This document shows, piece after piece, positions 2,745 through 51,496 of a DNA stretch of 64,000 bases. The position numbers were made by a program, and so were the translations under genes. Every line of letters starts with the position of its first letter. Position 1 is the stretch's first letter. Location: positions 1 through 64,000 of IMG/VR virus record IMGVR_UViG_3300032782_000001. One strand, 5' to 3'. The notes beneath the pieces were generated by a model. The model did no database searches. It had not been told where the DNA came from and saw only the letters and a list, made by a program, of their open reading frames with translations.

Positions 2745-2771
2745 TGGCAGGGGATCGTCGATCCCCTGCCA
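2745..2771. repeat. TGGCA-N17-TGCCA palindrome, copy 1
   Basis: TGGCAGGGGATCGTCGATCCCCTGCCA. Confidence 0.8.
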
Positions 2772-2816
2772 AGTATTTGTTTCAACCAGGGAATTTGCCC
2801 GTGTCGGGCCGAGCTT

Positions 2817-3272
2817 TCAAGATGGGACGACGAAATTTCCGCTTGAAAGAGCTGCCTGAAGGGACTTCATCATCACTTCCGGCGGGACGACACGCACGTC
2901 TCCCTCGACATCCGCGGCCATCCCAACCAGATCTTCCCAAGTGGCCGGAGGCGTCTCACCCTCCTCCAAATCCCACCCGACTTGGTCCCAAACCCCCTCC
3001 ATGTCGTCGTAAAGACCCATGGAGCCCCTGGTCCCACCCCCATGGATTTTCTCGTCAGCCGCTTCCACCGCGGCAGCCATCTCCGGAGTCCCTCCACCCG
3101 GAACTTTGAAAGCCTGCCATCCCCACGGCCCACTAACCGCCACATACGCGTCGCTCATAGCCGCCAGTACGCGGCGCAGCGCCGCACTTACGCGGACGCG
3201 ACTCGGTTTTTGACTGCGGTCAATTTTATCCGCAATTTGGCGCAAAGAAGCAGCAACCCGAGAAGGCGTCAT
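2817..3272 (-). CDS. protein with PSRVAASLRxIADKID leader (paralog of 14874-15284)
   Basis: near-identical 39-aa N-terminus. Confidence 0.85.
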   Translation of the reverse strand: MTPSRVAASLRQIADKIDRSQKPSRVRVSAALRRVLAAMSDAYVAVSGPWGWQAFKVPGGGTPEMAAAVEAADEKIHGGGTRGSMGLYDDMEGVWDQVGWDLEEGETPPATWEDLVGMAADVEGDVRVVPPEVMMKSLQAALSSGNFVVPS

Positions 3273-3363
3273 GCTTCTCTCCGTCAAAGGAGTTTTAGAA
3301 TCACGTCGCCACTTGCGTCAGCGGACCAAATTTTTGCCCCGCTTGCGTACGCGCGCGCAGGTA

Positions 3364-3390
3364 TGGCAGGTATTTCTGCGATCCCTGCCA
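3364..3390. repeat. TGGCA-N17-TGCCA palindrome, copy 2
   Basis: TGGCAGGTATTTCTGCGATCCCTGCCA. Confidence 0.7.
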
Positions 3391-3659
3391 GGGATCGAGC
3401 CGATCCTTCTAGTTAGGTTCGCCTTTTTGGCGTTTCTTTACTGAAGAGCCAAGTCATTCCGAGCACGGTGGTCACCAACCCCACCAAGAAGTAAGGCGGC
3501 GGGTATTCGTAGAGAAGCGCACCCAGCAAAGTAAAGCTGAGTCCGGAGATCACCAGGGCGACGGGAAAAAGGCGAGGCTTCACGAGTAAAAACCGGACCC
3601 TGGAGCCGCATGGTCGCCGGTTGGAGGTGACGACGGTCGGCTCCAGGGTCCCAAGGTGT

Positions 3660-3845
3660 TCAGTCGATGCGCCGCGCCTCCAAGCCCTTCTTCGTCGGAC
3701 GAAGGGTTCCGTCCACCTCGACGATGAAACCCTTCTTGACGAGGGCGAATCGCCGTCGACCGTCGATGGCGTGGGCCGGACACGGCTCCTTCACGTCGTC
3801 GCAATAGACAATTGAGAGCAGGGCCATCCAGGTTTCGAAAGTCAC
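3660..3845 (-). CDS. hypothetical protein
   Basis: SD GGAGG; GTGA overlap with upstream gene. Confidence 0.65.
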   Translation of the reverse strand: MTFETWMALLSIVYCDDVKEPCPAHAIDGRRRFALVKKGFIVEVDGTLRPTKKGLEARRID

Positions 3846-4201
3846 GGCGATTCCTCCTTCTTAGAACGCTCTGCGTCAAGGACCTTCTTGGCCCGGACGA
3901 ACAACTCCCGCCAGTAGACGTGGCTGAAGTAAACGGAGATAGACGAGTTCTTCCCCGGATTGAGGCCCCGGAGGCACTCGAGCAAGTCAGCATCCGAAAG
4001 CCCGTTCGCCGTGGCGAACGCTGCCTCGTACTGCGCTTGAGGAACGAGATTGAAGAGCTGCTCCACGAGCGGAACCTTCTCAGGTAGGTCCGGCGGACCG
4101 TCGCTCGGAGCCGGCGCGTTGTCCTTCACCAGCTTGGCAATGGCCTGAAGCTGGGCCTTTGCCTCCTCGAGCTTGTGCTCAACTTTCTCGTCGGATCCCA
4201 T
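3842..4201 (-). CDS. hypothetical protein
   Basis: SD GGAGG; ORF track. Confidence 0.8.
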   Translation of the reverse strand: MGSDEKVEHKLEEAKAQLQAIAKLVKDNAPAPSDGPPDLPEKVPLVEQLFNLVPQAQYEAAFATANGLSDADLLECLRGLNPGKNSSISVYFSHVYWRELFVRAKKVLDAERSKKEESP

Positions 4202-4245
4202 TTAATCAAAACCTCCGACCGATCTTACGTTGAAAAGCAGAAGGT

Positions 4246-4473
4246 TTACGACGTTTCGTAGACCTTCAAACTCTCCCACGCCGGGATAGCAAACTGCTCG
4301 TCGTAGTCCCGCTCCGTGTCGTTCATGTCCTGCCGCCAGTCGATCTCGTGCTGATAGCAGGACTTGCAAACGATGGCATTGGAATCGCCACCCGTCGGCA
4401 GAAGCCGGACTTCACCTTCGACGCAGATCCCGAGCTGCTTGTCACAGCGAGGATTGTTGTAATGAGTCGCCAA
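4246..4473 (-). CDS. hypothetical protein
   Basis: TTG start after cassette at 4476-4520. Confidence 0.7.
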   Translation of the reverse strand: MATHYNNPRCDKQLGICVEGEVRLLPTGGDSNAIVCKSCYQHEIDWRQDMNDTERDYDEQFAIPAWESLKVYETS

Positions 4474-4528
4474 GTTCGTCACCTCCGGATCCAAATACGA
4501 CCGGAGGTGACGAACTTGCGCCGTCGCG

Positions 4529-4999
4529 TCAGTCCAGACGATCGTCCTGACCACAACGAGGGTCGCACTGGCCCGGAGGCGCCCCGCACTCCTCGCAATC
4601 GTCCGAGTGGTCTTCCGGGTCGGAATTGTCATCGCAGATGGGAGTCCCACCCAAGGCTTCGAGAACCGCCGTCACCGTCTTGCAAACGGACGTCTCGGCC
4701 GTCCGAGGAGAACAGAGGGTCTCGCAAATTTTCCAAGACCGGACGTATTGCCAACCGTCGACGTAAGGAAGGGACAATCCCTCCCAACGGTCGTGACGCC
4801 AAGGGATCTCCCCGTGGTTCTCCTTGTCGATGTGCTTCGCCAACAGGTCGCAGACGACCCGGGCAAGCTCCTCCGAAGCACACAGGACCAAATGGTCCGT
4901 GTCCGGAGCCTCCCCGTCGTAATCGCCGTAGATCGCCCAGCAAGGCACGGCCAGAATCGGCTTGGCCAACTCGTAGATCTTCTCGAGGTCCTCAGTCAC
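4529..4999 (-). CDS. hypothetical protein with Cys-rich C-terminus
   Basis: after cassette at 5001-5045. Confidence 0.8.
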   Translation of the reverse strand: MTEDLEKIYELAKPILAVPCWAIYGDYDGEAPDTDHLVLCASEELARVVCDLLAKHIDKENHGEIPWRHDRWEGLSLPYVDGWQYVRSWKICETLCSPRTAETSVCKTVTAVLEALGGTPICDDNSDPEDHSDDCEECGAPPGQCDPRCGQDDRLD

Positions 5000-5062
5000 G
5001 TCGTCACCTCCGCGATCGGATACGACGCGGCCCGGCGGATTTCTGCGATCGCGCCGAGTTCT

Positions 5063-5359
5063 TCAAAAACTCCCGGCGGTTGAGCTGCGGTCGAACGACA
5101 GGATCATGTCGTTCCCGAAGAGTTTCTCGGCCACCTTCCGGTTCTCCGTCGGAGTTCCTTCTTCCAAGGGATGGACTTTGGAAGCCGGCACCCGGACGTT
5201 CTCGTACATGGAGTGCCACTTCACGACGTACGTGACCCTTCCAATCCCCGGCTTCCGATTCGGGTCGAGCTCGTTGGAGACCACCTCGCCTTCCACGAGC
5301 CGTCCCTTGAGGACGAAACCGACCTTCGAACCCTTCGGAAGAACCTTGTAACCACTCAT
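5063..5359 (-). CDS. hypothetical protein
   Basis: after cassette at 5367-5409. Confidence 0.8.
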   Translation of the reverse strand: MSGYKVLPKGSKVGFVLKGRLVEGEVVSNELDPNRKPGIGRVTYVVKWHSMYENVRVPASKVHPLEEGTPTENRKVAEKLFGNDMILSFDRSSTAGSF

Positions 5360-5437
5360 CCGGCCATCACCTCCTGCCCCCGATACGCCGCGGAACCGCC
5401 AGATTTGCGCCCCGGCTTCAAAGGGGACCTTTAAAGA

Positions 5438-7956: not shown

Positions 7957-7959
7957 CGT

Positions 7960-14873: not shown

Positions 14874-15284
14874 TCAGCTTACGCCGAGGAAATCGGCGAC
14901 GGCATCCATTACGATCTGCTGGATCCCTTCGGGATCTTGCGTAATATCGAAACCCGGTTTCCCCTCAATGCTCCCGTTCTTCCAATCCCAACCGCCGACG
15001 TTGCCCGCATCGTCCAGCATCAAAATCATGACGCCAGCAACAGGGTTCCCATCGACCAGTCCTTGAAACTTGGCTGCAGGTTCATTTGGTTTCTTTGTAA
15101 CTTCCGTCATCTCTAGACGGTATCCGCCAGGCTGCATCGGATCGCCGGATTCCGCCTCGCCTTCGTTCATACTCGCGAGTACGACGCGGATCGCCGAACT
15201 TACGCGGACGCGACTCGGATTGGAAGATCGGTCAATTTTATCGGCGATCTCTCGCAAGGAGGCGGCAACCCGAGAAGGTATCAT
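14874..15284 (-). CDS. protein with PSRVAASLRxIADKID leader
   Basis: N-terminus paralogous to 2817-3272. Confidence 0.85.
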   Translation of the reverse strand: MIPSRVAASLREIADKIDRSSNPSRVRVSSAIRVVLASMNEGEAESGDPMQPGGYRLEMTEVTKKPNEPAAKFQGLVDGNPVAGVMILMLDDAGNVGGWDWKNGSIEGKPGFDITQDPEGIQQIVMDAVADFLGVS

Positions 15285-15311
15285 GCCTCAATCCCTCAAA
15301 AGAGGGCTAGT

Positions 15312-21711: not shown

Positions 21712-22140
21712 ATGAAAGTTTCGCGGTCCGGAACGTACCAGATCCTGGAGGGCGTGCGTATGCGCCAGGAGATGAGAACGAAGCCGTCCGTGGAGGCCGG
21801 CATCAAGTCCGATTCCACGGACGGTCGAGCGCGTGTTGTCGACTACCAGCCGGGCAATGGTACGAGGTATGTCCTCGTTTTGACGAGCCTTTCAGGTCAT
21901 CCGAGCCAAGAGAAAGTTCTGACTCGAGAAGATCAGTGTGCTCTCGTCTGGGTTCAAAATTTCAAGCGTGGATGGATCGCTGGATTCGGCGGTACGAATC
22001 TCGTTCATTATTCTGACATCCAGAAGCATCTAGGTTGCTCCATCATGGATGCCGTCTCTTTGGCGGAAATTATTGGATTCCTTCTCAATCGACCGTGCGT
22101 TTCGGTAGATGATTTTCTCCGCGAAAAGAACGCCGTTTAG
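21712..22140 (+). CDS. hypothetical protein
   Basis: ORF track; start may be 21760 or 21772. Confidence 0.7.
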   Translation: MKVSRSGTYQILEGVRMRQEMRTKPSVEAGIKSDSTDGRARVVDYQPGNGTRYVLVLTSLSGHPSQEKVLTREDQCALVWVQNFKRGWIAGFGGTNLVHYSDIQKHLGCSIMDAVSLAEIIGFLLNRPCVSVDDFLREKNAV

Positions 22141-22142: not shown

Positions 22143-22169
22143 TGGCATACCCCGTTCTAATCCCTGCCA
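22143..22169. repeat. TGGCA-N17-TGCCA palindrome, copy 3
   Basis: TGGCATACCCCGTTCTAATCCCTGCCA. Confidence 0.7.
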
Positions 22170-22204
22170 GGGATTATGTAACCTGGTCCTAAGCTCCTTT
22201 TGAA

Positions 22205-22402
22205 ATGCTTAGGGCATGGCAGCTCAGACTGTTGCAATCACTTTCGGCACCACAGGACTCGGTCCGTATTGCAGGCCGTAAACATCGTTATGGGCTTAAC
22301 ATCCAAAGTGGAACAGAGTTTTATAAATATTTGAAACGAGAAAATTTCCCTGGAATCTTCCGGGTTCTTTGTTTTAATCATAACTGCGGCAAGCTTCACT
22401 AA
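22205..22402 (+). pseudogene. HNH-like endonuclease C-terminal remnant
   Basis: FYKYLKRENFP...RVLCFNHNCGK resembles phage HNH tails. Confidence 0.4.
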
Positions 22403-22425
22403 ACTCCTTTTGGGAATTTGGGTGT

Positions 22426-22830
22426 ATGGCCGCTCAAACGGTATCGATCTCGGTCGGATGTCAGTGGACGCCGCCTTTCGCGGTGCTCAACTCGGGCAAC
22501 AGCTCTTTCAACCTGAGCGCCCAGTACAACGCCCAAAATGTCGGGCAGATCGACATTCCTGGAGCAACGACTACGCCGACGGTCTTCCCGATTCCCTTTG
22601 GGACCGTGGCGAGTTGCAAGATGCTCATCATCAAGAACTGCATGTCGAGTGATATCGGCGTCCGATTCAATGGAGCAGTCGCAAATGAGTTCCAGGTGGC
22701 GCCTGGAGGTATGGTGATGGTTTCGATGCCGCAAGCACCTGTCACCAATCCTGTGACTTCAATTTCTGTCGTGACGACGTCCGTCCCCGGAGCGACCGAA
22801 TATGTCAGCTTCTGGGTTTTTGGCGACTGA
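22426..22830 (+). CDS. beta-rich protein, possibly virion-associated
   Basis: T/V/P/N-rich; no promoter cassette; CTAAACTCCTTTTG upstream. Confidence 0.7.
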   Translation: MAAQTVSISVGCQWTPPFAVLNSGNSSFNLSAQYNAQNVGQIDIPGATTTPTVFPIPFGTVASCKMLIIKNCMSSDIGVRFNGAVANEFQVAPGGMVMVSMPQAPVTNPVTSISVVTTSVPGATEYVSFWVFGD

Positions 22831-25845: not shown

Positions 25846-25887
25846 GCAAATTCGCCGCTGCTCCGCGTATCGGGCAGTGGAGGTGAC
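25846..25887 (+). promoter_or_regulatory. promoter/RBS cassette
   Basis: CGCAAATTC-N12-CGTAT-N8-GGAGGTGAC. Confidence 0.8.
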
Positions 25888-25891
25888 GCGA

Positions 25892-27465: not shown

Positions 27466-28428
27466 ATGACCAAGGCAGCCGCTAAGCAGTCCGTTGTCAC
27501 CAGCCTCAATCAACTCGAGCATCTCTTGAGGTCTCAGGAGACTTCCACTCCCATCACGGACGTAGCACTCTCGGCTGCCGCTGCCAGGGAGATCATCGAG
27601 AAGTGGGGCAAGGGAAACAGGCCTGTCTCGGATGTGACGGTCCAAAAATATAAGGGGGATATGGAGAACAACCGCTGGCGTTCCCATTCCCCCATCGGGT
27701 TCGGTGTGTTTCCGGACAAGATTCAGATTGGCGATGGGCAGCACAGGCTCATCGCACAGGACAAATCCTCCACCACGCAGGTCTACAGCGTTCAAGCATT
27801 CTCGGATAGTGACGAGTTCGAGGTCTTCGTCAAGACGGTGGACTCTGGGAAGCCCCGGAAGTTGTCGGATCTCTTCAGCATCCTCGAGACCTTCCCCCCG
27901 AATCAGTCCGCTCGGGCCCAGGCCATCACCAATTTCATGATGAAGTTTAGTGACATCAAGCTCACTACCGAATCTCAGCAGGACAAGGTGGACTATGCCA
28001 CTAGTCACCTCAAAGCCATCAGGTTCGCTTCCAGCCTGAACTCGAAGGAGTTCCAATCTCACGTCGCCGCGGCAATCGCCATCGCTCACAAGAAGCATCA
28101 GCGTGTTGTCGAAGCATTCGTGGATGCTGTTCACTCTGGTGTCGGCCTTGCAGCTGGTTCTCCAGCTCTCGTATTCAAGAATGCACTCAATGATTTGAAT
28201 TGTATCGCGCTGACCAACAAGAAGGAGGTCAAGCCTCGAGATCGTGCAATGGCAGTGACTTTGCGGGTGATTTACGACCACGCTCGCAACAAGAAGACTT
28301 CACACGTCAAAAAAACTCGCACGGACTCGAAGTACCTCCATGAGGTGATTACGTATTTCATCTCTTCGGATGTCGCTGACCAGTATCTGGCTCGGCATGC
28401 CAAAGAGGACACTTCTCACACTCCGTGA
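27466..28428 (+). CDS. ParB/Srx-fold protein with DGQHR motif
   Basis: IGDGQHRL. Confidence 0.7.
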   Translation: MTKAAAKQSVVTSLNQLEHLLRSQETSTPITDVALSAAAAREIIEKWGKGNRPVSDVTVQKYKGDMENNRWRSHSPIGFGVFPDKIQIGDGQHRLIAQDKSSTTQVYSVQAFSDSDEFEVFVKTVDSGKPRKLSDLFSILETFPPNQSARAQAITNFMMKFSDIKLTTESQQDKVDYATSHLKAIRFASSLNSKEFQSHVAAAIAIAHKKHQRVVEAFVDAVHSGVGLAAGSPALVFKNALNDLNCIALTNKKEVKPRDRAMAVTLRVIYDHARNKKTSHVKKTRTDSKYLHEVITYFISSDVADQYLARHAKEDTSHTP

Positions 28429-28435
28429 GGTATTG

Positions 28436-29365
28436 ATGGACATCAGGCATGTTCCGATTGAGGTCGACGACATCGTCGTCGACCATGACGTCATGATCCG
28501 GGATCGTTTGGATGAATCCTGGGTAAGGGAGCTCGCTGCCCTTTACGAAGATCGTCATCAGATCGATCCGATTCTTCTCATGAAAGACAAAGACGGAATC
28601 ATCCGCTTGGTGCACGGATTCTATCGGGTGGCCGCGCTGAAAATGTGCGGCCATTCCGGTACAACTGCAGAGATCCGCGAAGGTTCAAAGGATCAAGCCA
28701 TTCTTGCTGCATGCAGGGTGGACCATCATGGGTTGAGGAGGACTATTCAAGAGCAAAAGAAGGCAGTATTTCGGGTGAAAGAATCAGCCGAAATGAAGAA
28801 TTCAAGTAATAGGGCCATCGGAATTTATTGTGGTATTCCGGAGTGGGCCGTCGTCAAAATTCTTTTGGGCGAGGAACCTATCCTTGGTCCCAGGGTTTGC
28901 CATGTTTCAGTTCCTGGCGAACTCCCTTTGAAGAAGAACTTGACTGCCCTCTACGCGAAAATCGACTCGGCTCTCCGAGCTAATCCGAGCATGAATAGCA
29001 CGGAAATCAGCAAACTCTTGAAGTGCAACAGGGCGCTCGTTGCGAAGAGGCGGATTGAGATCGGAGTTCCTCAGGCTAACTTTCCGGGAAAGGCAAAACC
29101 TGAAGCTCGAGCCAGTATCATTGAATTACTGAAAAATAACCCCAAAAGGACTCTGGCTTCTATTGCTGAAGAGGTGGGAGTAGCCCCGTCCACTGTCAGT
29201 GGGATTAGGGACAAGCTACTAAAGGAGAAGAAGGAACAAGACGAGAAAAAGAAGGAACAAGCCCCGGCTCCCTCTGATGAAATGCCTTCGGCTCCCTTCA
29301 GGAAGGGAGCCCAACCCGATCCTCGCCTTACGTTCCAACAGTATAAGGTACGTTCAGGATCTTGA
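28436..29365 (+). CDS. ParB-like N-terminal domain plus HTH motifs
   Basis: PILL...LVHGFYRVAA; HTH-like SNRAIG and TLASIAEEVGVAPSTV. Confidence 0.75.
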   Translation: MDIRHVPIEVDDIVVDHDVMIRDRLDESWVRELAALYEDRHQIDPILLMKDKDGIIRLVHGFYRVAALKMCGHSGTTAEIREGSKDQAILAACRVDHHGLRRTIQEQKKAVFRVKESAEMKNSSNRAIGIYCGIPEWAVVKILLGEEPILGPRVCHVSVPGELPLKKNLTALYAKIDSALRANPSMNSTEISKLLKCNRALVAKRRIEIGVPQANFPGKAKPEARASIIELLKNNPKRTLASIAEEVGVAPSTVSGIRDKLLKEKKEQDEKKKEQAPAPSDEMPSAPFRKGAQPDPRLTFQQYKVRSGS

Positions 29366-29833: not shown

Positions 29834-29899
29834 AAGGCAATTTGGCGTCGATCCGCAAATTCAGCGATCCGACGCGTATCGATCTGTGGAGGTGACGAA

Positions 29900-31387
29900 A
29901 TGCAGATGTCCGATGTCTCCAGGCTGAAAGACCCGAAGCGGGTCTGCACGAAGGAGGACGGGTCTTACGACCACGCCCGTCTCGCCCTCTTGCAAAAGAA
30001 GGTTTCCGACTGCATGACGAAGATGTTCCGCAAGCCCGAGGGCGGCGGAAACCCCTTCCTCTACGCCCTCACCCTGCCCAAGCCGCACGAGCTCGCCATC
30101 GAGCTCCCCGGGCCCAATGGGAAGGACTTCCACACGGCTGCCACCGACGGCAAGAAGTTCTGGTGGCACCCGGACTTCCTCGAGAAGCTGGACTCGGAAG
30201 AGGTGCCCACGGTCATGGAGCACGAGGGTTATCACGTGATCCTCTTCCATCCGCAACGTGGCGTGGGGACCAACCCCCGCATCTTCAACTGGGCGATCGA
30301 CTACGTTGTCAACGCCATCATCGAGACCAATCACAAGCAGCTCAACCGCAAGGGCAAGCTTTGGGGCGGGAACCTCGGCGAGCCGCTCTCGTTCGCGGAT
30401 CTTCTCTCGTACATCGATGGAAATTCGGAGCTCCCGAAGGACAAGAATTCCATCTTCGTGGACGTCTCGCTTCACGGACGGAGTCCGGAGTCGATCTACG
30501 AAGAGATCATGGATCATTGGGACAAGAGTCCGCGCAAGTGCTCTCTCTGTACGTGCCTGTCCATCGATCCGAAGACTGGCAAGCCCATCCACGCCCTTCA
30601 CGGCAAGAGCCCAGTGCCGCCGGAGAAACCGCACGACCCCCACTGCGACGGGACCTGCTGTCCCAAGTGTGGCGTCAAGTCGGACCCGCTCGGGTCGATG
30701 GACGCTCACATCCCGGGCGCCCTGACGAAAGATGAGGTCATGGCGGATATCATGCGCGCCAGGGACCAGTCGACGGCCATGAGGGGCACCGTTCCCTCCG
30801 AAGTGGAAGATGCGCTCAAAGAGCTGATGAAGCCTACGCTGAAGTTCACGGACATCGTCAAGTCCTGCTTCATGCGCAAGATCCAGGATGCTGGGATGAA
30901 GAACGACTGGAAGCGCTGCCGACGCCGGTGGTTGGCCTCCAATCCCAAGCAGTATCTCCCGAGGCGCCACACTCATCGGCCCCGGTGGCTTGCGATGGTG
31001 GACACCAGCGGCTCCATGCAGGACGATGATCTCCTCTACGGAATCTCTCAGCTCAAGGTTCTGGGAGACAACACGGAAGGTTACGTCATCCCCTGCGACG
31101 CATCTCCGAAATGGGATGCCATGCAGAAGATCGACAAGGCCACGGACCTGCAGAGGACCAAGATCGTCGGGCGCGGAGGAACGGTCTTCGATCAGTTCTT
31201 CCAGGACTTCCCGAAGAAGATCGGGACGGACTTCGACGTGGTGGTCATCATCACGGACGGAGACTGCGGGACGATCCCCCTGCACCTCAAGCCGCCGTGC
31301 GATGTCGTCTGGGTCATCACCCGGACCATGAAGGAGTATAAGCCCAGCTTCGGACGCGTGGCCCCGCTCCGCCCCTCTCGGATGTGA
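29900..31387 (+). CDS. DUF2201-type putative metallopeptidase with VWA domain
   Basis: TAATDG, HExxH (HEGYH), MIDAS DTSGS, GGT, ITDG; cassette-led. Confidence 0.88.
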   Translation: MQMSDVSRLKDPKRVCTKEDGSYDHARLALLQKKVSDCMTKMFRKPEGGGNPFLYALTLPKPHELAIELPGPNGKDFHTAATDGKKFWWHPDFLEKLDSEEVPTVMEHEGYHVILFHPQRGVGTNPRIFNWAIDYVVNAIIETNHKQLNRKGKLWGGNLGEPLSFADLLSYIDGNSELPKDKNSIFVDVSLHGRSPESIYEEIMDHWDKSPRKCSLCTCLSIDPKTGKPIHALHGKSPVPPEKPHDPHCDGTCCPKCGVKSDPLGSMDAHIPGALTKDEVMADIMRARDQSTAMRGTVPSEVEDALKELMKPTLKFTDIVKSCFMRKIQDAGMKNDWKRCRRRWLASNPKQYLPRRHTHRPRWLAMVDTSGSMQDDDLLYGISQLKVLGDNTEGYVIPCDASPKWDAMQKIDKATDLQRTKIVGRGGTVFDQFFQDFPKKIGTDFDVVVIITDGDCGTIPLHLKPPCDVVWVITRTMKEYKPSFGRVAPLRPSRM

Positions 31388-31399
31388 TTTGCTGATATA

Positions 31400-31426
31400 T
31401 GGCAGGGGTCGTTACGACCCCTGCCA
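31400..31426. repeat. TGGCA-N17-TGCCA palindrome, copy 4
   Basis: TGGCAGGGGTCGTTACGACCCCTGCCA. Confidence 0.8.
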
Positions 31427-31444
31427 TATACTGGGGAGGTAACC

Positions 31445-31741
31445 ATGGACGACGAAGAGGACTACAACTCGCAGCCTCCGCGTAATTTCCGTCAGCGTCT
31501 ATCGATGAAGATCGGTGCCTGGTCAGATGGGATGGACGGGATTCGGACTCGAATCTATCATTTCGAGTCTGGCTGTTTTCATAGACTGCCTTTGCCATCC
31601 AGGGCTGTAAGGTGGTTTCAGAACCTTCTCGTCCGAATTTCATTTGCAGTAGATGACATCTGCCCGGAGTGCCAATGTTCTCCGGGTCATTCACGCGAAT
31701 GTTCGAAATACTGCCCTGTCAAGTACGTGATGGAATCTTGA
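31445..31741 (+). CDS. VMES-tag protein
   Basis: ends CPVKYVMES. Confidence 0.75.
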   Translation: MDDEEDYNSQPPRNFRQRLSMKIGAWSDGMDGIRTRIYHFESGCFHRLPLPSRAVRWFQNLLVRISFAVDDICPECQCSPGHSRECSKYCPVKYVMES

Positions 31742-31743
31742 AC

Positions 31744-32070
31744 ATGAACCTTGCAGGATCTCCCAAGCTTGTCGCCAGCCAGCTGCGCAAATTCTTATCG
31801 TCGGCGCGTATCGTTGCGTCGGAAGTTACTGATCCTGTAATCTGGGAGGCGGTCTGTAAGGACCCGAGCTTTTCGGGTCTCATTGAGACGGGTGCAGTAG
31901 CAAGTGCTTACCGGGCTCGGACCCAATTTCTTGGTAGGGACCGGAGGGATTTAACGGTTTACGTCTTCGTCAACTCTCTTACCTTGGATATTGTCGTCCA
32001 TTTCCGGACGAAAAATGCCATGCAAACCATCGTCAACAATGCGGTTATCCAATCCGTAATGGAATCCTGA
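31744..32070 (+). CDS. VMES-tag protein
   Basis: ends VIQSVMES. Confidence 0.7.
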   Translation: MNLAGSPKLVASQLRKFLSSARIVASEVTDPVIWEAVCKDPSFSGLIETGAVASAYRARTQFLGRDRRDLTVYVFVNSLTLDIVVHFRTKNAMQTIVNNAVIQSVMES

Positions 32071-32072
32071 AC

Positions 32073-32426
32073 ATGACCATGAATCAAAGGGACTTCGCGA
32101 ATTCTGATCAACCCCAAGAGCCCCGGCTCCGTACCAGGGAGTACCAGCCCCGGGACCCCAACCGTCCTCAGGACGATCGTCCTCGTCCTCCTCGCAGGGA
32201 CAGCCAGATCATCCTCACCGCCCGCGCCATCGACACGCAAAACGGCGAGGCCATGGTGTTCGAGTTCAAGGTCTGGATGTTCAAGGTCTGCTGCATCGTG
32301 AACTTCCCTCGATACGAGGACGAGAAGACCGCTCCTGTGTACGTCCGGCTGAAGCCTCTTCATCGAATCGAAGCCGATGATGTGGTTCAGCCTTCGGACG
32401 AGTTCCACCTCGCTGAAAATGGCTGA
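32073..32426 (+). CDS. hypothetical protein
   Basis: GC3-rich ORF. Confidence 0.75.
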   Translation: MTMNQRDFANSDQPQEPRLRTREYQPRDPNRPQDDRPRPPRRDSQIILTARAIDTQNGEAMVFEFKVWMFKVCCIVNFPRYEDEKTAPVYVRLKPLHRIEADDVVQPSDEFHLAENG

Positions 32427-32958
32427 ACCCTCTTGTTCCATCCATCCCGACGAGAAAAACTTCTACCTCTATGAGGGGAAGAAACCTCGTTGCAAGTCTT
32501 GCGTTCGGGATGGACTCAAGAGGTCTCGTCTAAAGAGGAAGCAAGCCGCCGCGTCCGCGGGGGTCTCGGCGGCGCCGGCATCGGCCGACGCCCCGGCCCC
32601 CGTGGCGCGGGCGCCACGCGCGGAGAAGCCCAAGCCCGCGCCCGCGCGGCCCCATCCGGCGGCCCCGCGGGCGCGCGGCTCGGTCCAATATCAAACCAAG
32701 GACCGGAACGCTCCTAACTATTGGAGCGTCACTTGGGGTAGACCTCCTGGAGGATGGCAGGGTCCTCCTTCTACGTCTCCGGACGCGTGGGGTCCATTCA
32801 AAGGGATGACGGACGACGAGATCCGTTATCGGAAGACCCTGCGCGGCCAGCCTTATCTGGCTCGGGGGTCAGCGTGGGTGTCTAAGGATGAATGGGACGC
32901 CCACGACAAATGGCTTGAGGAGTACAAAGTCAACCTTGCCAATAAGCACAATCGGTGA
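32419..32958 (+). CDS. hypothetical protein with Ala/Pro linker
   Basis: ORF track. Confidence 0.7.
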   Translation: MAEPSCSIHPDEKNFYLYEGKKPRCKSCVRDGLKRSRLKRKQAAASAGVSAAPASADAPAPVARAPRAEKPKPAPARPHPAAPRARGSVQYQTKDRNAPNYWSVTWGRPPGGWQGPPSTSPDAWGPFKGMTDDEIRYRKTLRGQPYLARGSAWVSKDEWDAHDKWLEEYKVNLANKHNR

Positions 32959-43063: not shown

Positions 43064-43139
43064 TCTGTTGTAAATTCTGCAAGGCCCGTCGGATCCGCAA
43101 ATTCGGCGGGCCGCGACGTATCTGGATCTGGAGGTGACT

Positions 43140-44084
43140 GTGCGCGATCTATCGAGGCTCAGGTATTTGCTTAGGTGGGCCCAACTCAATAAGACCTTCG
43201 AAAGGGTCCCGGCCAGTGGAATCCATGTTCCGCTTCGCGACAGTGTGACCCGGTATCAAATCCCAGTGGCCGGGGCCGAATTCCGTCGTGTGAACAATCC
43301 GCACGGGAATCCCGTCGCCAAGCTCCTCGTGGGCTCTCAGGAGATCCAGATCGGAGCCGAGGGATTGGACGACGCCGAGAAGCTGGAAATTGCCCTGGAA
43401 ACTCTCTTCCAGGAGAGGCCGCCAGTGTGGGAATCTCCAGATCTTTCGGACGCCATTCAGCAGGCGTTGTCCCACGCTCGACGAGATGACGTCAAATCCC
43501 GTTTCAATAAGGTCGTCACCGGTCCCATGGACACCGATGAATATACCCATTGGATGAATTTCACCCTTGGTTTGGCTGAGGGGGAGTGTTCGAAAGAATC
43601 TCGAACGGAAATGGTCCTGGGCCATTACATCACCACGACTTATATCTTCAAAGGAACGGAAGCTCAAGCCATTTCCAGCTTGGAAGGACTCCGCGACGTC
43701 AAGCGAATGCCGACTCCGCGTCGTGTGCTCGTCAAAATGGTGCATCTCCGGATGTCGAAGATGCGCAAGGAAGTGGAAGAAGAGAACAATCGTCGGAGGA
43801 AGCAAAGGGCCGAAGACGCATTGCAAGCCAGCCTTCCTCCCAATGATCCGAACAAGCAGAAGAATTACCACCCTAGTGGTAAACCCGACGTCATTATTGG
43901 AGATCTGGATAACCGCGCCAATTGCAAGATGTCAGCATCCAAAGCCAACTATGACGCTGGGTACTGGACCATCCGGCGGGAAGCTGAAAACCTGATGAAA
44001 TGTCTGCAGCGAGAAGACATTGACGATAGCATTATTCACGATGCTTGGAAATTGTATCTCGTCGGCGATGTGATGCAATCATAA
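43140..44084 (+). CDS. VMES-tag protein (314 aa)
   Basis: cassette-led; ends LVGDVMQS. Confidence 0.85.
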   Translation: MRDLSRLRYLLRWAQLNKTFERVPASGIHVPLRDSVTRYQIPVAGAEFRRVNNPHGNPVAKLLVGSQEIQIGAEGLDDAEKLEIALETLFQERPPVWESPDLSDAIQQALSHARRDDVKSRFNKVVTGPMDTDEYTHWMNFTLGLAEGECSKESRTEMVLGHYITTTYIFKGTEAQAISSLEGLRDVKRMPTPRRVLVKMVHLRMSKMRKEVEEENNRRRKQRAEDALQASLPPNDPNKQKNYHPSGKPDVIIGDLDNRANCKMSASKANYDAGYWTIRREAENLMKCLQREDIDDSIIHDAWKLYLVGDVMQS

Positions 44085-44085: not shown

Positions 44086-44112
44086 TGGCAGGGGTTTACT
44101 AAACCCCTGCCA
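44086..44112. repeat. TGGCA-N17-TGCCA palindrome, copy 5
   Basis: TGGCAGGGGTTTACTAAACCCCTGCCA. Confidence 0.8.
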
Positions 44113-44128: not shown

Positions 44129-44581
44129 ATGTACGGGAGTGGCTCTTCCAATGAGCAGATGAATACGTTGCTGGCCGAGCGCATCTTCAAGTGGTTGCTC
44201 GACCGTGGTGATTTCATTGAATGGCTGGACCGCCAGCTCATGGACCAAGGATTGGAACTCTTCGCTCAATTGGACTCTCTCACCGCCATGGATGTTGGCC
44301 GAGTCCTTCTCGGCATGCCCGAATGGATTAAAACGAGGTACCGGACCGTTGGAGGTGGTGGCTCCGACGTCCCAACTTTCTTCACGGAGCGCGTGAAGGA
44401 AGAAGTGGCGAAAGATTCCTTCCTCGAGTCATGTGTTGGTAAGTCCGTCCCTGTGACCGCCGCCTGTTTGTCGATGGTCGGTGAGGCTGTCAAACGGACG
44501 AGGTTCTACACGGAGAATGCAACCGAGATGCGACGTCGGATCCGCCATACTAAGGTTGTCCGCCACGTCATGGACTCATGA
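44129..44581 (+). CDS. VMES-tag protein
   Basis: ends VVRHVMDS. Confidence 0.8.
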   Translation: MYGSGSSNEQMNTLLAERIFKWLLDRGDFIEWLDRQLMDQGLELFAQLDSLTAMDVGRVLLGMPEWIKTRYRTVGGGGSDVPTFFTERVKEEVAKDSFLESCVGKSVPVTAACLSMVGEAVKRTRFYTENATEMRRRIRHTKVVRHVMDS

Positions 44582-48242: not shown

Positions 48243-48326
48243 TGTATGGCATGGATCAGCTTTATCCTTGTCATATATTTTGTAAAGCTATGTCATAGAT
48301 CTTGGAAATTATGAGATTCTGAACCC

Positions 48327-48557
48327 ATGTCGAATTCCAAAAAATCTCACCCATTTTACGTCGCTCGGAGAGCGTACATATATGAGCCAGGGAAACGCTC
48401 TCTACCTGAATATCTCGTAATTCATACCTCTCAGGAATATTGCATCGGGTGTTTCACGCGATCAGGTTATGAAATTGTCAGCGTGAAGCTCGGAATGCGA
48501 CACGCAAAAAGATTAGCTGGCAAGCTAAACGACGTTCGGAAAATCATGGATTCCTGA
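48327..48557 (+). CDS. VMES-tag protein
   Basis: ends VRKIMDS. Confidence 0.75.
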   Translation: MSNSKKSHPFYVARRAYIYEPGKRSLPEYLVIHTSQEYCIGCFTRSGYEIVSVKLGMRHAKRLAGKLNDVRKIMDS

Positions 48558-48977
48558 ATGGATGATCTGGAGATTCAATCAAGAATAACTTCTCTTCAAG
48601 AATCCAAGCGGATCACATCTGCGGTGGAGGCCATATTGAATGAGGTAAATCTTGGAGAGATATTCCAGTTTATCCAATTGGGAGTCATGGAATCTGTCGA
48701 TCAAGGGCCGCTTTTAACTGCCATCTGGTCTGTGCCTAATGCGGATGACTTGAGCACGACAATGAAATTCCGGGCTGTCACTGAAATTATGGTCAAACCG
48801 GAAGACTCGGATTTCGTTCCAACAATCCATAAAACGTGTCGAGCCTTAGTGTTTCATGTATTGGCTCATGAACTACATGAATTTTATCAGTACCAAGGGA
48901 AAAGAGTATTTGAGCCTCATCCCACAGGCAACGTGAGCCCATTCATCATCCGATGGATGATGATACCTATACCATGA
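48558..48977 (+). CDS. protein with internal GVMES and an HELHE motif
   Basis: ORF track. Confidence 0.7.
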   Translation: MDDLEIQSRITSLQESKRITSAVEAILNEVNLGEIFQFIQLGVMESVDQGPLLTAIWSVPNADDLSTTMKFRAVTEIMVKPEDSDFVPTIHKTCRALVFHVLAHELHEFYQYQGKRVFEPHPTGNVSPFIIRWMMIPIP

Positions 48978-49029
48978 AGTAGCAGGAATTCTTACGATTC
49001 TGACGTACAGATATGTGGAGGCAATTCGA

Positions 49030-49725
49030 ATGAAGGACAACGAGGAACGGAGCACGCACGAGAGTTACGGGATGGTGAGCTTCAGCCGGCGCACCGGGAA
49101 CCCGGGACGCTTGTTTGGTTCTCCACTCAATCAGCACGAAAGTTACGTTTGCCTCTCCATCCGCAAGTCGGAACTCATCCGAGATGGCCTCCATGATAGG
49201 ACATACGGCTCGATTCGGGGTGACCTCATTGAGGTGGACATGTCGGCAGCGCAGTTTGCCGAACTTCTGACGACCATGAACGTTGGCATGGGAGTCCCAT
49301 GCACGATTTCCAGTTTCAACGGGCGTCAAATGGAAAGGCCCCCGGAGATCGAGCATGAAGTGGAGAAGGTTCGCACGACCTTCAAGAAGGAACTTTCCAA
49401 TCTTGTCGCAGAGACCAAGAAGAACACCAAAGAAATTTGGGACCTTTTGGACACGAAAGGTTCTCTCTCGAAGGCTGACCGCGAGAAGATCAAAGCTCAT
49501 TTGAGTCACATCAGTATGGAGCTGGAAGCCAACATGCCTTACACGTTGGATATGTTCCGAGAAGCGACCGAAAAGGTCGTCGTTCACGCGAAAGCTGAAG
49601 TGGACGCGTTTGTGACGGCAAACGTCGTCCAAACCGGTCTTCGGACCCTCATCGAACAATCCCAGAAATCTCAGACTCCAGCACTGCCTGCACCGGAGGA
49701 CGATGAGACGGCCGGAGACCGTTGA
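49030..49725 (+). CDS. hypothetical phage protein
   Basis: SD GGAGG; long ORF. Confidence 0.85.
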   Translation: MKDNEERSTHESYGMVSFSRRTGNPGRLFGSPLNQHESYVCLSIRKSELIRDGLHDRTYGSIRGDLIEVDMSAAQFAELLTTMNVGMGVPCTISSFNGRQMERPPEIEHEVEKVRTTFKKELSNLVAETKKNTKEIWDLLDTKGSLSKADREKIKAHLSHISMELEANMPYTLDMFREATEKVVVHAKAEVDAFVTANVVQTGLRTLIEQSQKSQTPALPAPEDDETAGDR

Positions 49726-49950
49726 GATCTAATCTTCCCAACGTACGTTCGGTTCATGGCTAAAAAATCTAAGCCTTGTTGCCCCAAGTGCAAGTCGAAG
49801 GACTTGAAGGTATATCAAGTCGTCCACAACGTCCCGCACTATCGCTGCCAGGGATGCAACTGGGAAGGCCGACCGAAGAAGTAAATGGGAGACAAGATAA
49901 TAGTCTTGTCTCCCATTTCCGTATTTGTATGCATTTGTGTTTGTTCGGCC

Positions 49951-50169
49951 CTAACGAACGTGAACAGGTCCAATGACTGGGCCTCCCCCAATCCCTCCAA
50001 GGATTGAGACGAGCCATATAATCAAAAAAATCGCGCAGATAACCAGAACCGCGATCCGTGCAAAATTCTTGATAGCCGGATCGATGGGCAGGAGAGATAC
50101 TACGTAGAGCAAAAGCCCTACGATAATCGCAATCACGATGGCGTAGATTAGCAACGCAACAAGCGACAT
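49951..50169 (-). CDS. small two-TM membrane protein (Thivi_2564-like)
   Basis: two hydrophobic helices around LPIDP; SD AGGAGG. Confidence 0.75.
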   Translation of the reverse strand: MSLVALLIYAIVIAIIVGLLLYVVSLLPIDPAIKNFARIAVLVICAIFLIIWLVSILGGIGGGPVIGPVHVR

Positions 50170-50217
50170 AACTCAACCTCCTAGGGAACGGGGCTGTTAG
50201 TGTGGCGCTTGTGTTGG

Positions 50218-50448
50218 CTAGGCTGCCACGGGTGGGACGATCTTGTATTCCCGCTCGGGATGAACGATTTTGAGTTCGTCCACTTTGGCAGTGGCTTCTT
50301 CAGCAGTCGCGAACTCTCCCTTCAACGTCTTGTACTCAGACTGGCCTGCGGTGTTGTCACGCCATTGGATGACGAACAGGAGCCGATGTTTCCCGGATTC
50401 GGGGGCATTCGTATCTTCTACGTTGGACTGGGTGTTGTGCTTTGCCAT
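50218..50448 (-). CDS. hypothetical protein
   Basis: ORF track. Confidence 0.65.
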   Translation of the reverse strand: MAKHNTQSNVEDTNAPESGKHRLLFVIQWRDNTAGQSEYKTLKGEFATAEEATAKVDELKIVHPEREYKIVPPVAA

Positions 50449-50733
50449 AAGAATACTTTTAGCAATATTTGTTCCATATTGGTGAATTCATTCTAACGGT
50501 TAAGTGTGCCAACCTGTATCAGGTTGAATATGACTAATAATAATGTATATCATGATTCTTCCAAGAACACTCGTTCCGACCGATGGAAATTCTGGTGTCA
50601 GCAGGGTACCGATTTTAGGAACAGACCTCAGGAATCCTGGTAGGTTACGCTAAATGGCACCTCTCCGAGGTACTATTTAATAGCCCCGGTTCTTGAGAAG
50701 GTCCGGCTTTTTAGGATCGGGGCTGTTAAATAC

Positions 50734-51120
50734 ATGTCGGACTGTCCCAAAGACTTGGTGTTTCCGTTCCATTATGAGAGCGGTGGAATTTCTTGGCACT
50801 TGGAACGGCCCCTCCGTGAAGGTGGTCGGTTTTCAACATCGGTCAACGGGATAACATCTGAATTCTGGCTGACGGGATCTGAACGTTGGTCCGGCCGACG
50901 CCGGATTCTTCCTGGTTTAATCCGTCGTTTTGTTCGAAAATGCCGGAAACTTCGGCCTGGTCACATATGGTCAGTCCAGTCTCTAGATTTCGGGACTTGG
51001 GGAGTCTCGTGTGTCCATTGTGGACTCAATCAACATTGGGTTCCAAGATTCCGTGATGTCCCTGATCTCGGTACCCTGAATTGCAGAATGCGTCAGGTAT
51101 CTCAAGTGATGGAGAGTTGA
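50734..51120 (+). CDS. VMES-tag protein
   Basis: ends VSQVMES (Ser codon AGT). Confidence 0.8.
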   Translation: MSDCPKDLVFPFHYESGGISWHLERPLREGGRFSTSVNGITSEFWLTGSERWSGRRRILPGLIRRFVRKCRKLRPGHIWSVQSLDFGTWGVSCVHCGLNQHWVPRFRDVPDLGTLNCRMRQVSQVMES

Positions 51121-51130
51121 CGGAGGGCTA

Positions 51131-51415
51131 ATGACCTCTGTAATCGGAATCGAACAAGTTATTGCTTGCCTCTGTCAAAGGAAAATTTCTTTGGTCGATG
51201 AAATTCATCAGCGGGACGAAGCCGATATGGCTCTGGCGGATCTCTTCGGGGGATCCGAAATCATGTTGGACCTTTCTAAAGAATTCCGATCAGATGGTGC
51301 CTGGTTGATTGTCACCTGGTGGTTAGAAACTGAAATGGAACAATCTCAATTTGAGGTTCCTGTGGAAATGCTTTGTCCTGGAAACGAATCTGTTTTGATT
51401 GTTATGCTTTCTTAA
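51131..51415 (+). CDS. VMES-tag protein (variant)
   Basis: ends VLIVMLS. Confidence 0.65.
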   Translation: MTSVIGIEQVIACLCQRKISLVDEIHQRDEADMALADLFGGSEIMLDLSKEFRSDGAWLIVTWWLETEMEQSQFEVPVEMLCPGNESVLIVMLS

Positions 51416-51496
51416 ATATATGGCATATATTAAAACGACCCTTCTGCCATATATTCACGGTATGCCACATATTTAAACGATCCCTGCCATGCGTCC

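What the first reader, a model, noticed from the sequence alone, without database searches (positions are those of the whole stretch)
2745..51489. Dispersed palindrome TGGCA-N17-TGCCA
Seen with exact 17-nt spacing at 2745, 3364, 22143, 31400 and 44086, all at gene boundaries, often TGGCAGGGG...CCCCTGCCA with AT-rich flanks. Two degenerate tandem copies lie at 51421-51489. Spacing is kept even when the interior cannot pair (22143), which argues for a dimeric DNA-binding protein rather than a terminator. Inference: an operator or parS-like organising site; the ParB-fold/HTH proteins at 27466-29365 are candidate binders.
Basis: partly seen in the sequence, partly recalled or inferred. Interest (0 to 1): 0.6.

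Follow-up and report, generated by a model that had tools for sequence, protein, structure and literature searches.

The report
Conserved dyad at phage gene junctions
A 27-base mirror-image DNA motif, present about eleven times in one arc of a 436-kb phage genome and kept at the same gene junctions in related huge phages, is most likely a gene-expression control signal that often doubles as a hairpin, not a DNA-partition site.

Summary
TGGCA-N17-TGCCA occurs 5 times in the window against 0.05 expected. It occurs 7 times in the whole 436-kb circularly assembled virus genome, all in one 45-kb arc across the contig junction. A profile search raises this to 11 sites, none outside the arc.

The same dyad sits at the same place, just 3' of a DUF2201/VWA gene, in phages whose protein is only 52-71% identical. 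There the arms differ but stay complementary. More distant relatives keep only a half-unit, (C)TG[GC]CA[CT]ATA, next to an unrelated hairpin.

The sites always lie at stop/start junctions. They fall either 16-45 nt before a start codon or between convergent genes, and two paralogous small genes are bracketed by them.

The arc coincides with about 40 copies of a second repeat ("P1", a promoter-plus-ribosome-site cassette). Genes directly after a dyad lack P1.

No ParA, Pfam ParB_N or integrase match is found.

Best reading, at confidence 0.4: a junction element made of a protein-bound dyad plus a hairpin that gates expression of P1-less genes, akin to PeSL or CIRCE. The binder is unknown and no transcript data exist.

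The parts
2745..2771 (.). Dyad, perfect palindrome. Arms reach 19 bp when the flanks (2739-2777) are included. It lies 45 nt beyond the stop of the minus-strand gene B, and the nearest gene to its left is on the plus strand (P1 at 1706), so the junction is convergent.
   Evidence: (dG -34.8, z -9.0)
3364..3390 (.). Dyad whose interior does not pair. Its right arm forms a substitute hairpin with 3391-3397. It lies 91 nt upstream of the start of gene B at 3272 on the minus strand.
2817..3272 (-). Gene B (151 aa), bracketed by the dyads at 3364 and 2745. It is a paralogue of gene A (435,042-435,368, outside the window), which is bracketed by the dyads at 434,989 and 435,375.
22143..22169 (.). Dyad whose interior does not pair, with a substitute hairpin formed by its right arm and 22170-22176. 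It starts 2 nt after the stop of gene 21760-22140. A truncated duplicate of the 5' end of the 22426 gene follows it.
29857..29899 (+). P1 cassette in front of the DUF2201/VWA gene. It is one example of about 40 P1 copies, all confined to the arc that also holds the dyads.
29900..31387 (+). DUF2201/VWA gene. It has a P1 cassette upstream and a dyad downstream, and it served as the anchor for finding relatives.
31400..31426 (.). Dyad, palindrome with arms of 16-17 bp counting flanks (31396-31430). It starts 12 nt after the DUF2201 stop and ends 18 nt before the ATG at 31445. The orthologous site is present in L024, L025/L026 and L139.
31445..31741 (+). First of four genes (31445-32958) that follow the dyad and have no P1. 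It has no homologue in any of the relatives fetched.
44086..44112 (.). Dyad, perfect palindrome with 13-bp arms. It starts 1 nt after the stop of gene 43134-44084, which has a P1 at 43099, and ends 16 nt before the ATG at 44129. In L027 the matching junction keeps only the right-hand half-unit.
48247..48273 (.). Degenerate dyad (TGGCA-N17-TGTCA) with paired flanks, 53 nt upstream of the ATG at 48327.
51421..51489 (.). Cluster of four half-units in the gap before the gene at 51497. It contains TGGCA-N19-TGCCA at 51421 and TGCCA-N17-TGCCA at 51463. No stable hairpin forms here.
27466..29365 (+). The two ParB/Srx-superfamily genes proposed as binders: a DGQHR-motif protein at 27466-28428 and a ParB-like N-terminus plus winged HTH at 28436-29365. 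They are not conserved together with the motif.

Best explanation
The dyads are junction elements of a distinct expression regime that covers about 58 kb of this huge phage.

Shown:
- Nearly every gene of the arc 430.4 kb -> junction -> 52.4 kb carries its own P1 cassette. P1 consists of a CGYAAATYC box, about 12 nt, a CGTAT box, about 7 nt, GGAGGTGA, then ATG.
- The 11 dyads occur only in this arc.
- They sit at the end of a P1-driven gene and directly in front of genes that lack P1, or between convergent genes.
- Two paralogous small genes are bracketed by a dyad on each side.

Inferred mechanism:
- A still unidentified dimeric or two-domain protein, phage- or host-encoded, binds the two AT-r-T-r-TGGCA half-sites. 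Because the motif is conserved across the clade, the protein should be too.
- The half-sites are 22 bp apart centre to centre, which is two helical turns, so both lie on the same face of the duplex.
- The right half-site ends in CCATAT, one base different from the CGTAT box of P1. It lies 18-28 nt before the start codon, the same geometry as in P1.
- Binding would therefore decide whether transcription starts at, or passes through, the junction into the P1-less and mostly variable genes.
- In RNA, most copies also fold into a 12-22-bp hairpin that ends or stabilises the upstream message. The element would then be a combined operator and hairpin.
- Bracketing of genes by such repeats would, as a by-product, favour gain and loss of cassettes by recombination.
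For: - Non-randomness and arc restriction.
- The spacing is fixed at 17 where the interior cannot pair.
- The half-site is conserved beyond TGGCA, at the flank positions A-5 and T-4 and in the inner GGG.
- The same dyad lies 3' of the DUF2201 gene in L024, L025/L026 and L139, at 52-71% protein identity.
- A half-unit is retained at the same junction in nearly all of 16 relatives. It stands either inside or next to a hairpin, and occurs in inverted, everted, direct or single layouts.
- Clusters of sites occur in G001, syntenic with the own junction region, and in G003.
- Pairing exceeds the controls: 71.5% of cells paired against 64.2% in shuffles (0 of 500 reach it) and 32-42% when the partner is slid.
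- Six sites form stable hairpins.
- P1 is restricted to the same arc, and genes directly after dyads lack it. P1 is conserved in relatives.
- Gene A is bracketed by 434,989 and 435,375, and gene B by 3364 and 2745.
- Generic perfect hairpins elsewhere in the genome show the same junction contexts: 16 co-directional, 7 convergent, 1 divergent.
Against: - No binding protein has been identified.
- The only Pfam HTH in the arc belongs to a protein that is absent from relatives.
- No RNA data exist for this uncultured phage, so no transcript start, end or read-through has been shown.
- The symmetry of non-conserved positions is not required by a DNA-binding dimer. It could mean the element acts purely as RNA, or it could result from template-switch 'palindromisation'.
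- G:T versus A:C mismatches (28 against 19) do not discriminate between the two.
- Only about 2 of about 13 larger intergenic gaps in 19.9-41.4 kb carry a dyad, so its role is a special one rather than a general one.
- The reading of P1 as a promoter is itself inferred from sequence.
Confidence: 0.4

Rival explanations
1. A purely RNA-level hairpin: a terminator, a processing site or an mRNA-stabilising stem between cistrons. The sequence would be conserved because a phage RNA-binding protein or nuclease recognises the stem, in the manner of boxB.
For: - Six strong hairpins.
- Compensatory changes between orthologous sites.
- Substitute hairpins at 3364 and 22143.
- The sites at 2745 and 435,375 lie between convergent genes.
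- Generic hairpins in this genome occupy the same contexts.
Against: - The N17 spacing is kept in sites where TGGCA and TGCCA cannot form a stable stem (22143, 435,577, 51421 cluster; z -0.7 to -2.5).
- There is no U-tract. Only two sites are flagged by the terminator scan, and overall counts do not exceed the shuffles.
- No excess of G:U over A:C mismatches.
- No Rfam family matches.
- Relatives keep single half-units without a partner.
Confidence: 0.2
2. Recombination or mobility sites that bracket gene cassettes. This would resemble PeSL mini-circle shuffling, attC or REP/MITE elements, and would explain why variable ORFan genes follow the dyads.
For: - Genes A and B are each bracketed by two dyads.
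- The genes after the dyads at 31400 and 44086 are not conserved in relatives, whereas the genes before them are.
- A truncated duplicate of a gene's 5' end lies next to 22143.
- PeSLs in T4-type phages behave this way (PMC4122927, PMC2839356).
Against: - The genome has no tyrosine recombinase match.
- The sites are stable at syntenic positions across 50-70% protein identity.
- The gene blocks after 31400 and 44086 have a dyad on one side only.
- An IMG/VR-wide scan for the motif returned only single hits at chance level.
Confidence: 0.13
3. A promoter in its own right, for one of the two phage sigma factors or for an unrecognised phage RNA polymerase. TGGCA and TGCCA would then act as -35/-10-like boxes with a 17-nt spacer, or the site would be a hairpin promoter of the N4 type.
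For: - The phage encodes a full-length sigma-70-family protein with regions 1.2, 2, 3 and 4, and a second shorter one.
- A 17-nt spacer is the canonical -35/-10 spacer.
- The right half-unit plus its AT-rich tail lies 16-45 nt before start codons.
- Single half-units suffice in relatives.
Against: - A promoter has no need to be palindromic.
- Two sites lie between convergent genes.
- The boxes do not resemble a sigma-70 consensus, and sigma-70-like sites are not enriched.
- P1 is the abundant promoter-like motif of the arc, and it is different.
- There is no match to T7-type or Rpb2-type polymerase models, although divergent polymerases would be missed.
- The stems are far longer than the 5-7-bp N4 hairpins (from my own knowledge).
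Confidence: 0.12
4. A parS-like centromere or organising site bound by the ParB/Srx-like proteins at 27466-29365.
For: - The sites straddle the cumulative GC-skew minimum and the main strand switch at about 20-22 kb.
- Two ParB/Srx-superfamily genes lie in the arc.
- Dispersed copies of a palindrome are typical of parS, matS and similar sites.
Against: - The two proteins are missing from relatives that keep the motif.
- There is no match to Pfam ParB_N or to ParA-type AAA_31.
- No GERRxR CTPase motif is present: one protein reads HGFYRVAA and the other GDGQHRL.
- Every site lies at a stop/start junction, a constraint that parS does not have.
- The arc is equally well defined by the P1 cassettes.
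Confidence: 0.07

Closest known systems
PeSL / PmSL elements of T4-type phages (composite stem-loop plus early promoter; Arbiol 2010 PMC2839356; Comeau 2014 PMC4122927)
   Same: - Short repeated intergenic elements in the region of small variable genes of a large phage.
- A stem-loop at the end of one gene, followed directly by expression signals, a Shine-Dalgarno sequence and the start of the next gene.
- Genes can be bracketed by two copies.
- The elements lie next to gene content that differs between relatives.
   Different: - PeSLs carry a recognisable sigma-70-like -35/N17/-10 promoter downstream of a short stem-loop.
- Here no such promoter is found.
- The conserved sequence lies inside the stem.
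- The dyad spacing persists without pairing.
- The abundant promoter-like cassette (P1) is a separate element.
CIRCE operator of HrcA (9-N9-9 inverted repeat; from my own knowledge)
   Same: - A 27-bp inverted repeat with conserved arms and a variable centre.
- Placed between the expression signals and the start codon.
- Reported to act both as a DNA operator and as an mRNA hairpin.
   Different: - The arm sequence differs (TTAGCACTC against TGGCAGGGG).
- The equivalent spacing is N15, not N17.
- CIRCE is a host heat-shock regulon.
- HrcA was not looked for here.
parS / ParB, and related organising sites such as matS and NBS
   Same: Several dispersed copies of a palindrome, confined to one sector of the replicon near the GC-skew minimum.
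   Different: - The sequence and length differ.
- The sites lie strictly at gene junctions.
- No ParA or Pfam ParB_N match is found.
- The ParB/Srx-like genes are not conserved with the motif.
Phage phi29 p4 binding sites (inverted repeat with a 15-bp gap; from my own knowledge)
   Same: A small phage transcription regulator that binds two short half-sites about two helical turns apart, next to promoters.
   Different: - The sequence is unrelated.
- phi29 has only a few sites at one promoter region.
- No hairpin component is involved.
Stoperators of cluster A mycobacteriophages and REP/BIME elements of enterobacteria (from my own knowledge)
   Same: Sequence-conserved short repeats placed in the short gaps between genes of one genome region. 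REPs are palindromic and act on mRNA ends.
   Different: - Stoperators are asymmetric 13-bp sites, oriented with transcription.
- REPs number in the hundreds, depend on RAYT transposases, and are not known in phages.

Membership tests
parS/ParB partition or organising system | A cognate ParB (ParB_N CTPase domain with GERRxR, plus HTH) encoded with the sites and conserved together with them | tested here: not met
   - The whole genome has no Pfam ParB_N match at E<=0.01.
- P0121 shows only weak ParB/Noc similarity (E 0.02-0.3) with the motif HGFYRVAA. P0122 has a DGQHR motif.
- Both proteins are absent from L024, L025 and L139 and from G001, G002, G003 and G005.
parS/ParB partition or organising system | A ParA-type ATPase partner | tested here: not met
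   PF13614 (AAA_31) has no match in the genome, while the control genomes all match. Other ParA models were not tried.
parS/ParB partition or organising system | Sites clustered near the replication origin | tested here: inconclusive
   The dyads straddle the cumulative GC-skew minimum at 20-25 kb. The same arc is, however, defined by the P1 cassettes. The origin has not been located experimentally.
parS/ParB partition or organising system | Protein binding and CTP-dependent spreading | not testable with these tools
   This needs EMSA or ChIP.
PeSL (T4-type promoter-early stem-loop) | A stem-loop at the 3' end of a gene, directly upstream of the next gene's expression signals, SD and ATG | tested here: met
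   At 31400, 44086 and 434,989, and at L024, L025, L139 and G001_a, the order is stop, hairpin, 16-26 nt, ATG.
PeSL (T4-type promoter-early stem-loop) | A sigma-70-like -35/N17/-10 promoter inside the element | tested here: not met
   The consensus scan places no sigma-70-like promoter at any dyad, and counts do not exceed the shuffles.
PeSL (T4-type promoter-early stem-loop) | Located in hyperplastic regions, next to gene content that differs between relatives | tested here: met
   The genes after the dyads at 31400 and 44086 have no or only distant homologues in 16 relatives, whereas the flanking core genes are conserved.
Intrinsic (Rho-independent) terminator | A G+C-rich hairpin followed by a U-tract | tested here: not met
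   The hairpin is present in 6 of 11 sites. Only 2745 and 44086 pass the T-tail rule, both on the minus strand, and for 44086 that is the non-coding direction. Terminator-like sites are not enriched over the shuffles.
N4-type hairpin promoter | A 5-7-bp stem with a 3-nt loop, recognised by a giant virion RNA polymerase | tested here: not met
   The stems are 12-22 bp. No T7-type polymerase match was found (the control was uninformative), and five of the largest ORFs had no matching PHROG. A very divergent polymerase cannot be excluded.
Integron attC / cassette sites | A tyrosine recombinase and the GTTRRRY core sites | tested here: not met
   The genome has no PF00589 match, and the core sequence is different.
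Rfam RNA families | A match to any curated covariance model | tested here: not met
   Only tRNAs were found, in the window and in 420-436 kb.
CIRCE/HrcA | The TTAGCACTC-N9-GAGTGCTAA consensus and an HrcA repressor | not tested
   The geometry is similar (9-N9-9) but the arm sequence differs on inspection. HrcA was not searched for, and the host is unknown.

The most novel reading that the evidence does not exclude
A clade of huge soil and wetland phages may use a two-tier, lineage-specific expression code in one roughly 60-kb arc. In the first tier, a P1 promoter/ribosome-site cassette stands in front of almost every gene, and some copies carry a built-in anti-SD hairpin. In the second tier, TGGCA-N17-TGCCA dyads work as protein-gated hairpin switches, acting as anti-termination or insulator points. 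These switches would release, and by recombination also exchange, cassettes of P1-less ORFan genes. The dyad-binding factor would be a new conserved regulator.
Probability: 0.2. Interest if true: 0.7.

Novelty: new variant of a known kind. Interest (0 to 1): 0.55.

Why it matters
Gene regulation in huge phages known only from metagenomes is almost unexplored. This genome carries two sequence-defined, clade-conserved cis-elements, the dyad and P1, which mark out a 58-kb expression domain. They give concrete handles for work that needs no cultured host:
- synthetic reporters;
- cell-free expression combined with DAP-seq to find the binder;
- annotation of transcription units in hundreds of related contigs.

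The result also removes a tempting but unsupported ParB/parS annotation.

Tried and rejected
- Sigma-54 promoter: the GG/GC spacing is wrong on inspection of the sites.
- Sigma-70 promoters and intrinsic terminators: not enriched, and not centred on the dyads.
- Rfam: nothing but tRNA.
- Megablast of 22-46 kb against the phage and plasmid collections: no match.
- Exact motif scan of IMG/VR: 21 contigs with one hit each and no matching flanks, which is chance level.
- Close-relative scan with a single protein: nothing found.
- Handles for the Logan, ENA and JGI loci: not held.
- Sequencing-run search: only two DNA runs and no RNA run. Read laying was therefore not used, because contigs cannot show RNA ends.
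- G:U versus A:C mismatch asymmetry: not significant.
- Enriched 8-mers upstream of crude ORF calls: no clear motif at first. P1 emerged only on reading the intergenic gaps.
- PHROG scan of five giant ORFs, done to identify a polymerase: one weak tail hit and nothing else.
- The small paralogues A and B considered as autoregulated binders: no relatives by word search, and an uninformative Atlas lookup of the third paralogue. This idea stays unsupported.
- Literature searches for the motif strings: only unrelated hits or none.
- N23 matches of TGGCA...TGCCA: unrelated sequences.

Full report
WHAT THE WINDOW IS. The window is the first 64 kb of a single 436,316-base virus record from a wetland metagenome. 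Its ends share 127 identical bases, so the assembly is circular or circularly permuted, with 436,189 unique bases. Cumulative GC skew reaches its minimum at 20-25 kb. Long genes run on the plus strand from about 22 to 170 kb and on the minus strand from about 175 to 400 kb. The genome encodes two sigma-70-family proteins. No model matched for an RNA polymerase core, a T7-type polymerase, ParA, ParB_N or a tyrosine recombinase.

THE OBSERVATION.
- TGGCA-N17-TGCCA occurs at the five stated places, against 0.05 expected.
- Genome-wide there are seven at N17 and 0-2 at every other spacing. N23 is the exception with five, and those sequences are unrelated to each other.
- The two extra sites, at 434,989 and 435,577, lie just before the junction. 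All seven therefore fall in one 45.3-kb arc (p about 9e-6).
- A profile built from 18 sites finds 11 places in the genome with E<0.3. Approximate starts are 434,989, 435,375, 435,577, 2745, 3364, 22143, 31400, 44086, 48247, 51421 and 51463.
- Nothing outside the arc scores below E=1.
- The half-site is longer than five bases. Reading outward it has A at -5 and T at -4, and reading inward it has GGG followed by (G/A)T(C/T).

STRUCTURE AND SPACING ARE BOTH KEPT.
- Four of the seven exact sites are perfect palindromes with arms of 13-19 bp.
- As RNA, six of the eleven fold at -17 to -35 kcal/mol, with z from -3.7 to -9.0.
- The sites at 22143, 435,577 and 3364 keep the 17-nt spacing with an interior that cannot pair.
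- At 3364 and 22143 the right arm pairs instead with the next bases downstream, which puts TGCCA in the loop.
- Over 18 sites from five genomes, the palindromic pairing holds in 71.5% of cells. Column shuffles give 64.2%, and none of 500 reaches the observed value. Sliding the partner gives 32-42%.
- G:T and A:C mismatches (28 against 19) do not show whether the pairing matters in RNA or in DNA.

RELATIVES. The neighbouring DUF2201/VWA protein has hundreds of relatives on large contigs.
- In L024, L025/L026 and L139 (52-71% identity) the same dyad lies 7-16 nt after the stop of that gene. The arms are 17, 20 and 22 bp long. The outer and inner parts of the arms differ between genomes but remain complementary.
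- More distant relatives carry other layouts at the same junction: an everted layout (L030, L143, L147), a direct one (L145), or an unrelated G+C-rich hairpin followed by a single (C)TG[GC]CA[CT]ATA unit (L140, L142, L033).
- The junction after the homologue of gene 43134-44084 in L027 keeps only that unit.
- The position matching 22143 in L024 keeps the right-hand unit.
- The complete relative G001 has four N17 pairs within 850 bp, at a place weakly syntenic with the junction region of this genome.
- G003 has three sites within 560 bp of an ORF-free, palindrome-rich stretch.
- The constant part across all of these is a half-unit with an AT-rich tail, on the strand of the downstream gene, 16-28 nt before its start codon, and always next to or inside a hairpin.

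CONTEXT IN THIS GENOME. Reading the larger intergenic gaps revealed a second repeat, P1. It consists of a CGYAAATYC box, 11-14 nt, a CGTAT box, 4-14 nt, GGAGGTGA, and then the start codon.
- A regular expression finds 42 copies, all between 430,445 and 52,400. At least one of them, at 21740, is probably spurious. A relaxed form gives 49 copies inside the arc and 9 outside.
- P1 stands in front of the conserved genes (MoxR-type ATPase, DUF2201, BRCT, ligase) and is conserved in L024, L025, L027, L139, L033, L140 and L147.
- The dyads occupy the same arc, but the genes right after them (435,042, 3272, 31445, 44129, 48327 and 51497) have no P1.
- At 31400 and 44086 a P1-driven gene ends, the dyad follows, and then come two to four P1-less genes that relatives do not share.
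- Gene A (435,042-435,368, plus strand) has the dyad 434,989 lying 26 nt upstream and the dyad 435,375 lying 6 nt after its stop.
- A convergent 36-codon gene (435,421-435,531, minus strand) shares that 3' dyad and has the dyad 435,577 lying 45 nt upstream.
- Gene B (3272-2817, minus strand) is a paralogue of A. It has the dyad 3364 upstream and 2745 downstream, and 2745 faces a plus-strand gene.
- Dyads therefore occur at 5' ends and also in convergent gaps. That fits neither a pure promoter nor a pure terminator.

THE PROPOSED BINDERS. P0121 (28436-29365) has a weak ParB/Noc-like N-terminus and a winged HTH. P0122 (27466-28428) has a DGQHR motif and matches an uncharacterised PHROG. Neither has a homologue within 10 kb of the motif in L024, L025 or L139, nor anywhere in G001, G002, G003 or G005. 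P0121 carries the only Pfam HTH in the arc. The conserved binder, if there is one, is therefore either unrecognised or host-encoded.

INTERPRETATION. The evidence shows a sequence-specific, spacing-constrained dyad that is usually also a selected hairpin. It sits at junctions of a particular expression domain. I rank a combined operator/hairpin junction element first, at 0.40. It would gate expression of P1-less genes. It works like the PeSL terminator-promoter composites of T4-type phages (PMC4122927, PMC2839356) and like CIRCE (from my own knowledge). The other readings, in order:
- an RNA-only hairpin (0.20);
- a recombination or cassette site (0.13);
- an autonomous promoter for a phage sigma or polymerase (0.12);
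- a parS-like site (0.07).

The element is not a member of any of these families. The PeSL promoter, the terminator U-tract, ParB/ParA, the N4 hairpin geometry and the attC recombinase were each tested and not met. The steps from 'binds a dimer' onwards are inference. No transcript or binding data exist.

LIMITS.
- Gene calls outside 19.9-41.4 kb are my own crude ORF calls, refined with P1.
- P1 as a promoter is itself inferred.
- Relatives were sampled through a single anchor gene.
- No RNA runs hold this phage.

Noticed in passing
window 127-52400, and 430,445-434,502 of the same genome (for example window 29857-29899, 25848-25891, 43099-43133): About 40 copies of a promoter-plus-ribosome-site cassette, 'P1'. 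It consists of a CGYAAATYC box, about 12 nt, a CGTAT box, about 7 nt, GGAGGTGA(CGA), then ATG. All copies lie within one 58-kb arc of the 436-kb genome, and P1 is conserved in related phages. It also reveals the true gene strands in the G+C-rich first 22 kb.
   Followed up: partly
window 123-157, about 403, about 713, about 4483, about 16966; genome 436,074-436,102: In several P1 copies the spacer between the two boxes is the reverse complement of the Shine-Dalgarno region. This gives a 12-bp anti-SD:SD hairpin with the CGTAT box in the loop, which could be a translational switch acting on read-through transcripts.
   Followed up: no
window 2817-3272 (-), 14874-15284 (-); genome 435,042-435,368 (+), about 327,900-328,036 (-); L024 about 1656-1745 (-): A paralogous family of small proteins with a conserved N-terminus of about 40 residues (MTPSrVAaSLRqIAdKIDrS...) and unrelated C-terminal parts. 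This recalls the targeting sequences of phage internal proteins. No relatives were found by word search.
   Followed up: partly
window 22205-22402: A truncated, stop-ridden duplicate of the 5' end and upstream CTCCTTTTG motif of the gene at 22426-22830. It lies directly after the dyad at 22143.
   Followed up: partly
genome 434,421-436,102 and window 123-2777: A 4.6-kb stretch across the contig junction, with G+C up to 0.63, holds ten perfect palindromes with arms of 11-25 bp. One of them is a 50-bp perfect palindrome at 434,421-434,470. G003 has a similar palindrome-rich, partly ORF-free stretch at 160.6-163.2 kb.
   Followed up: partly
window, for example 31739-31741, 44579-44581, 48555-48557, 44082-44084: Many small proteins end in (V/I)-M-(D/E/Q)-S, with the next gene's ATG overlapping the stop codon. 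Words such as GTGATGGA and ATGGAATC are the most enriched 8-mers before starts. This looks like a translational-coupling signal written into the C-termini.
   Followed up: no
window about 22190-22215, about 22400-22425, about 3290-3300 (-), about 15300-15310 (-): A recurrent CTCCTTTTG(A/G) motif lies 15-20 nt before the start codon of a few genes that have neither P1 nor a nearby dyad half-unit. It is also present in L024, L027 and L147.
   Followed up: no
genome 152,751-153,953 (+) and 175,734-176,399 (-): The phage encodes two sigma-70-family proteins. One is 400 aa with regions 1.2, 2, 3 and 4. The other is 221 aa, and only region 2 is detected in it.
   Followed up: partly
genome about 435,690-435,720 (-): A sequence resembling the T-arm and acceptor end of a tRNA, which ARAGORN and Rfam do not call. 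It lies just right of the dyad at 435,577.
   Followed up: no
whole genome: The tetranucleotide TATA occurs at 0.34 of expectation and GATC at 1.47. The dyad flanks and interiors are nevertheless rich in TATA and GATC respectively.
   Followed up: no
window 49883-49918: A perfect 15-16-bp-arm hairpin, unrelated to the dyad family, followed by a T-rich tail. It is probably an ordinary terminator.
   Followed up: no
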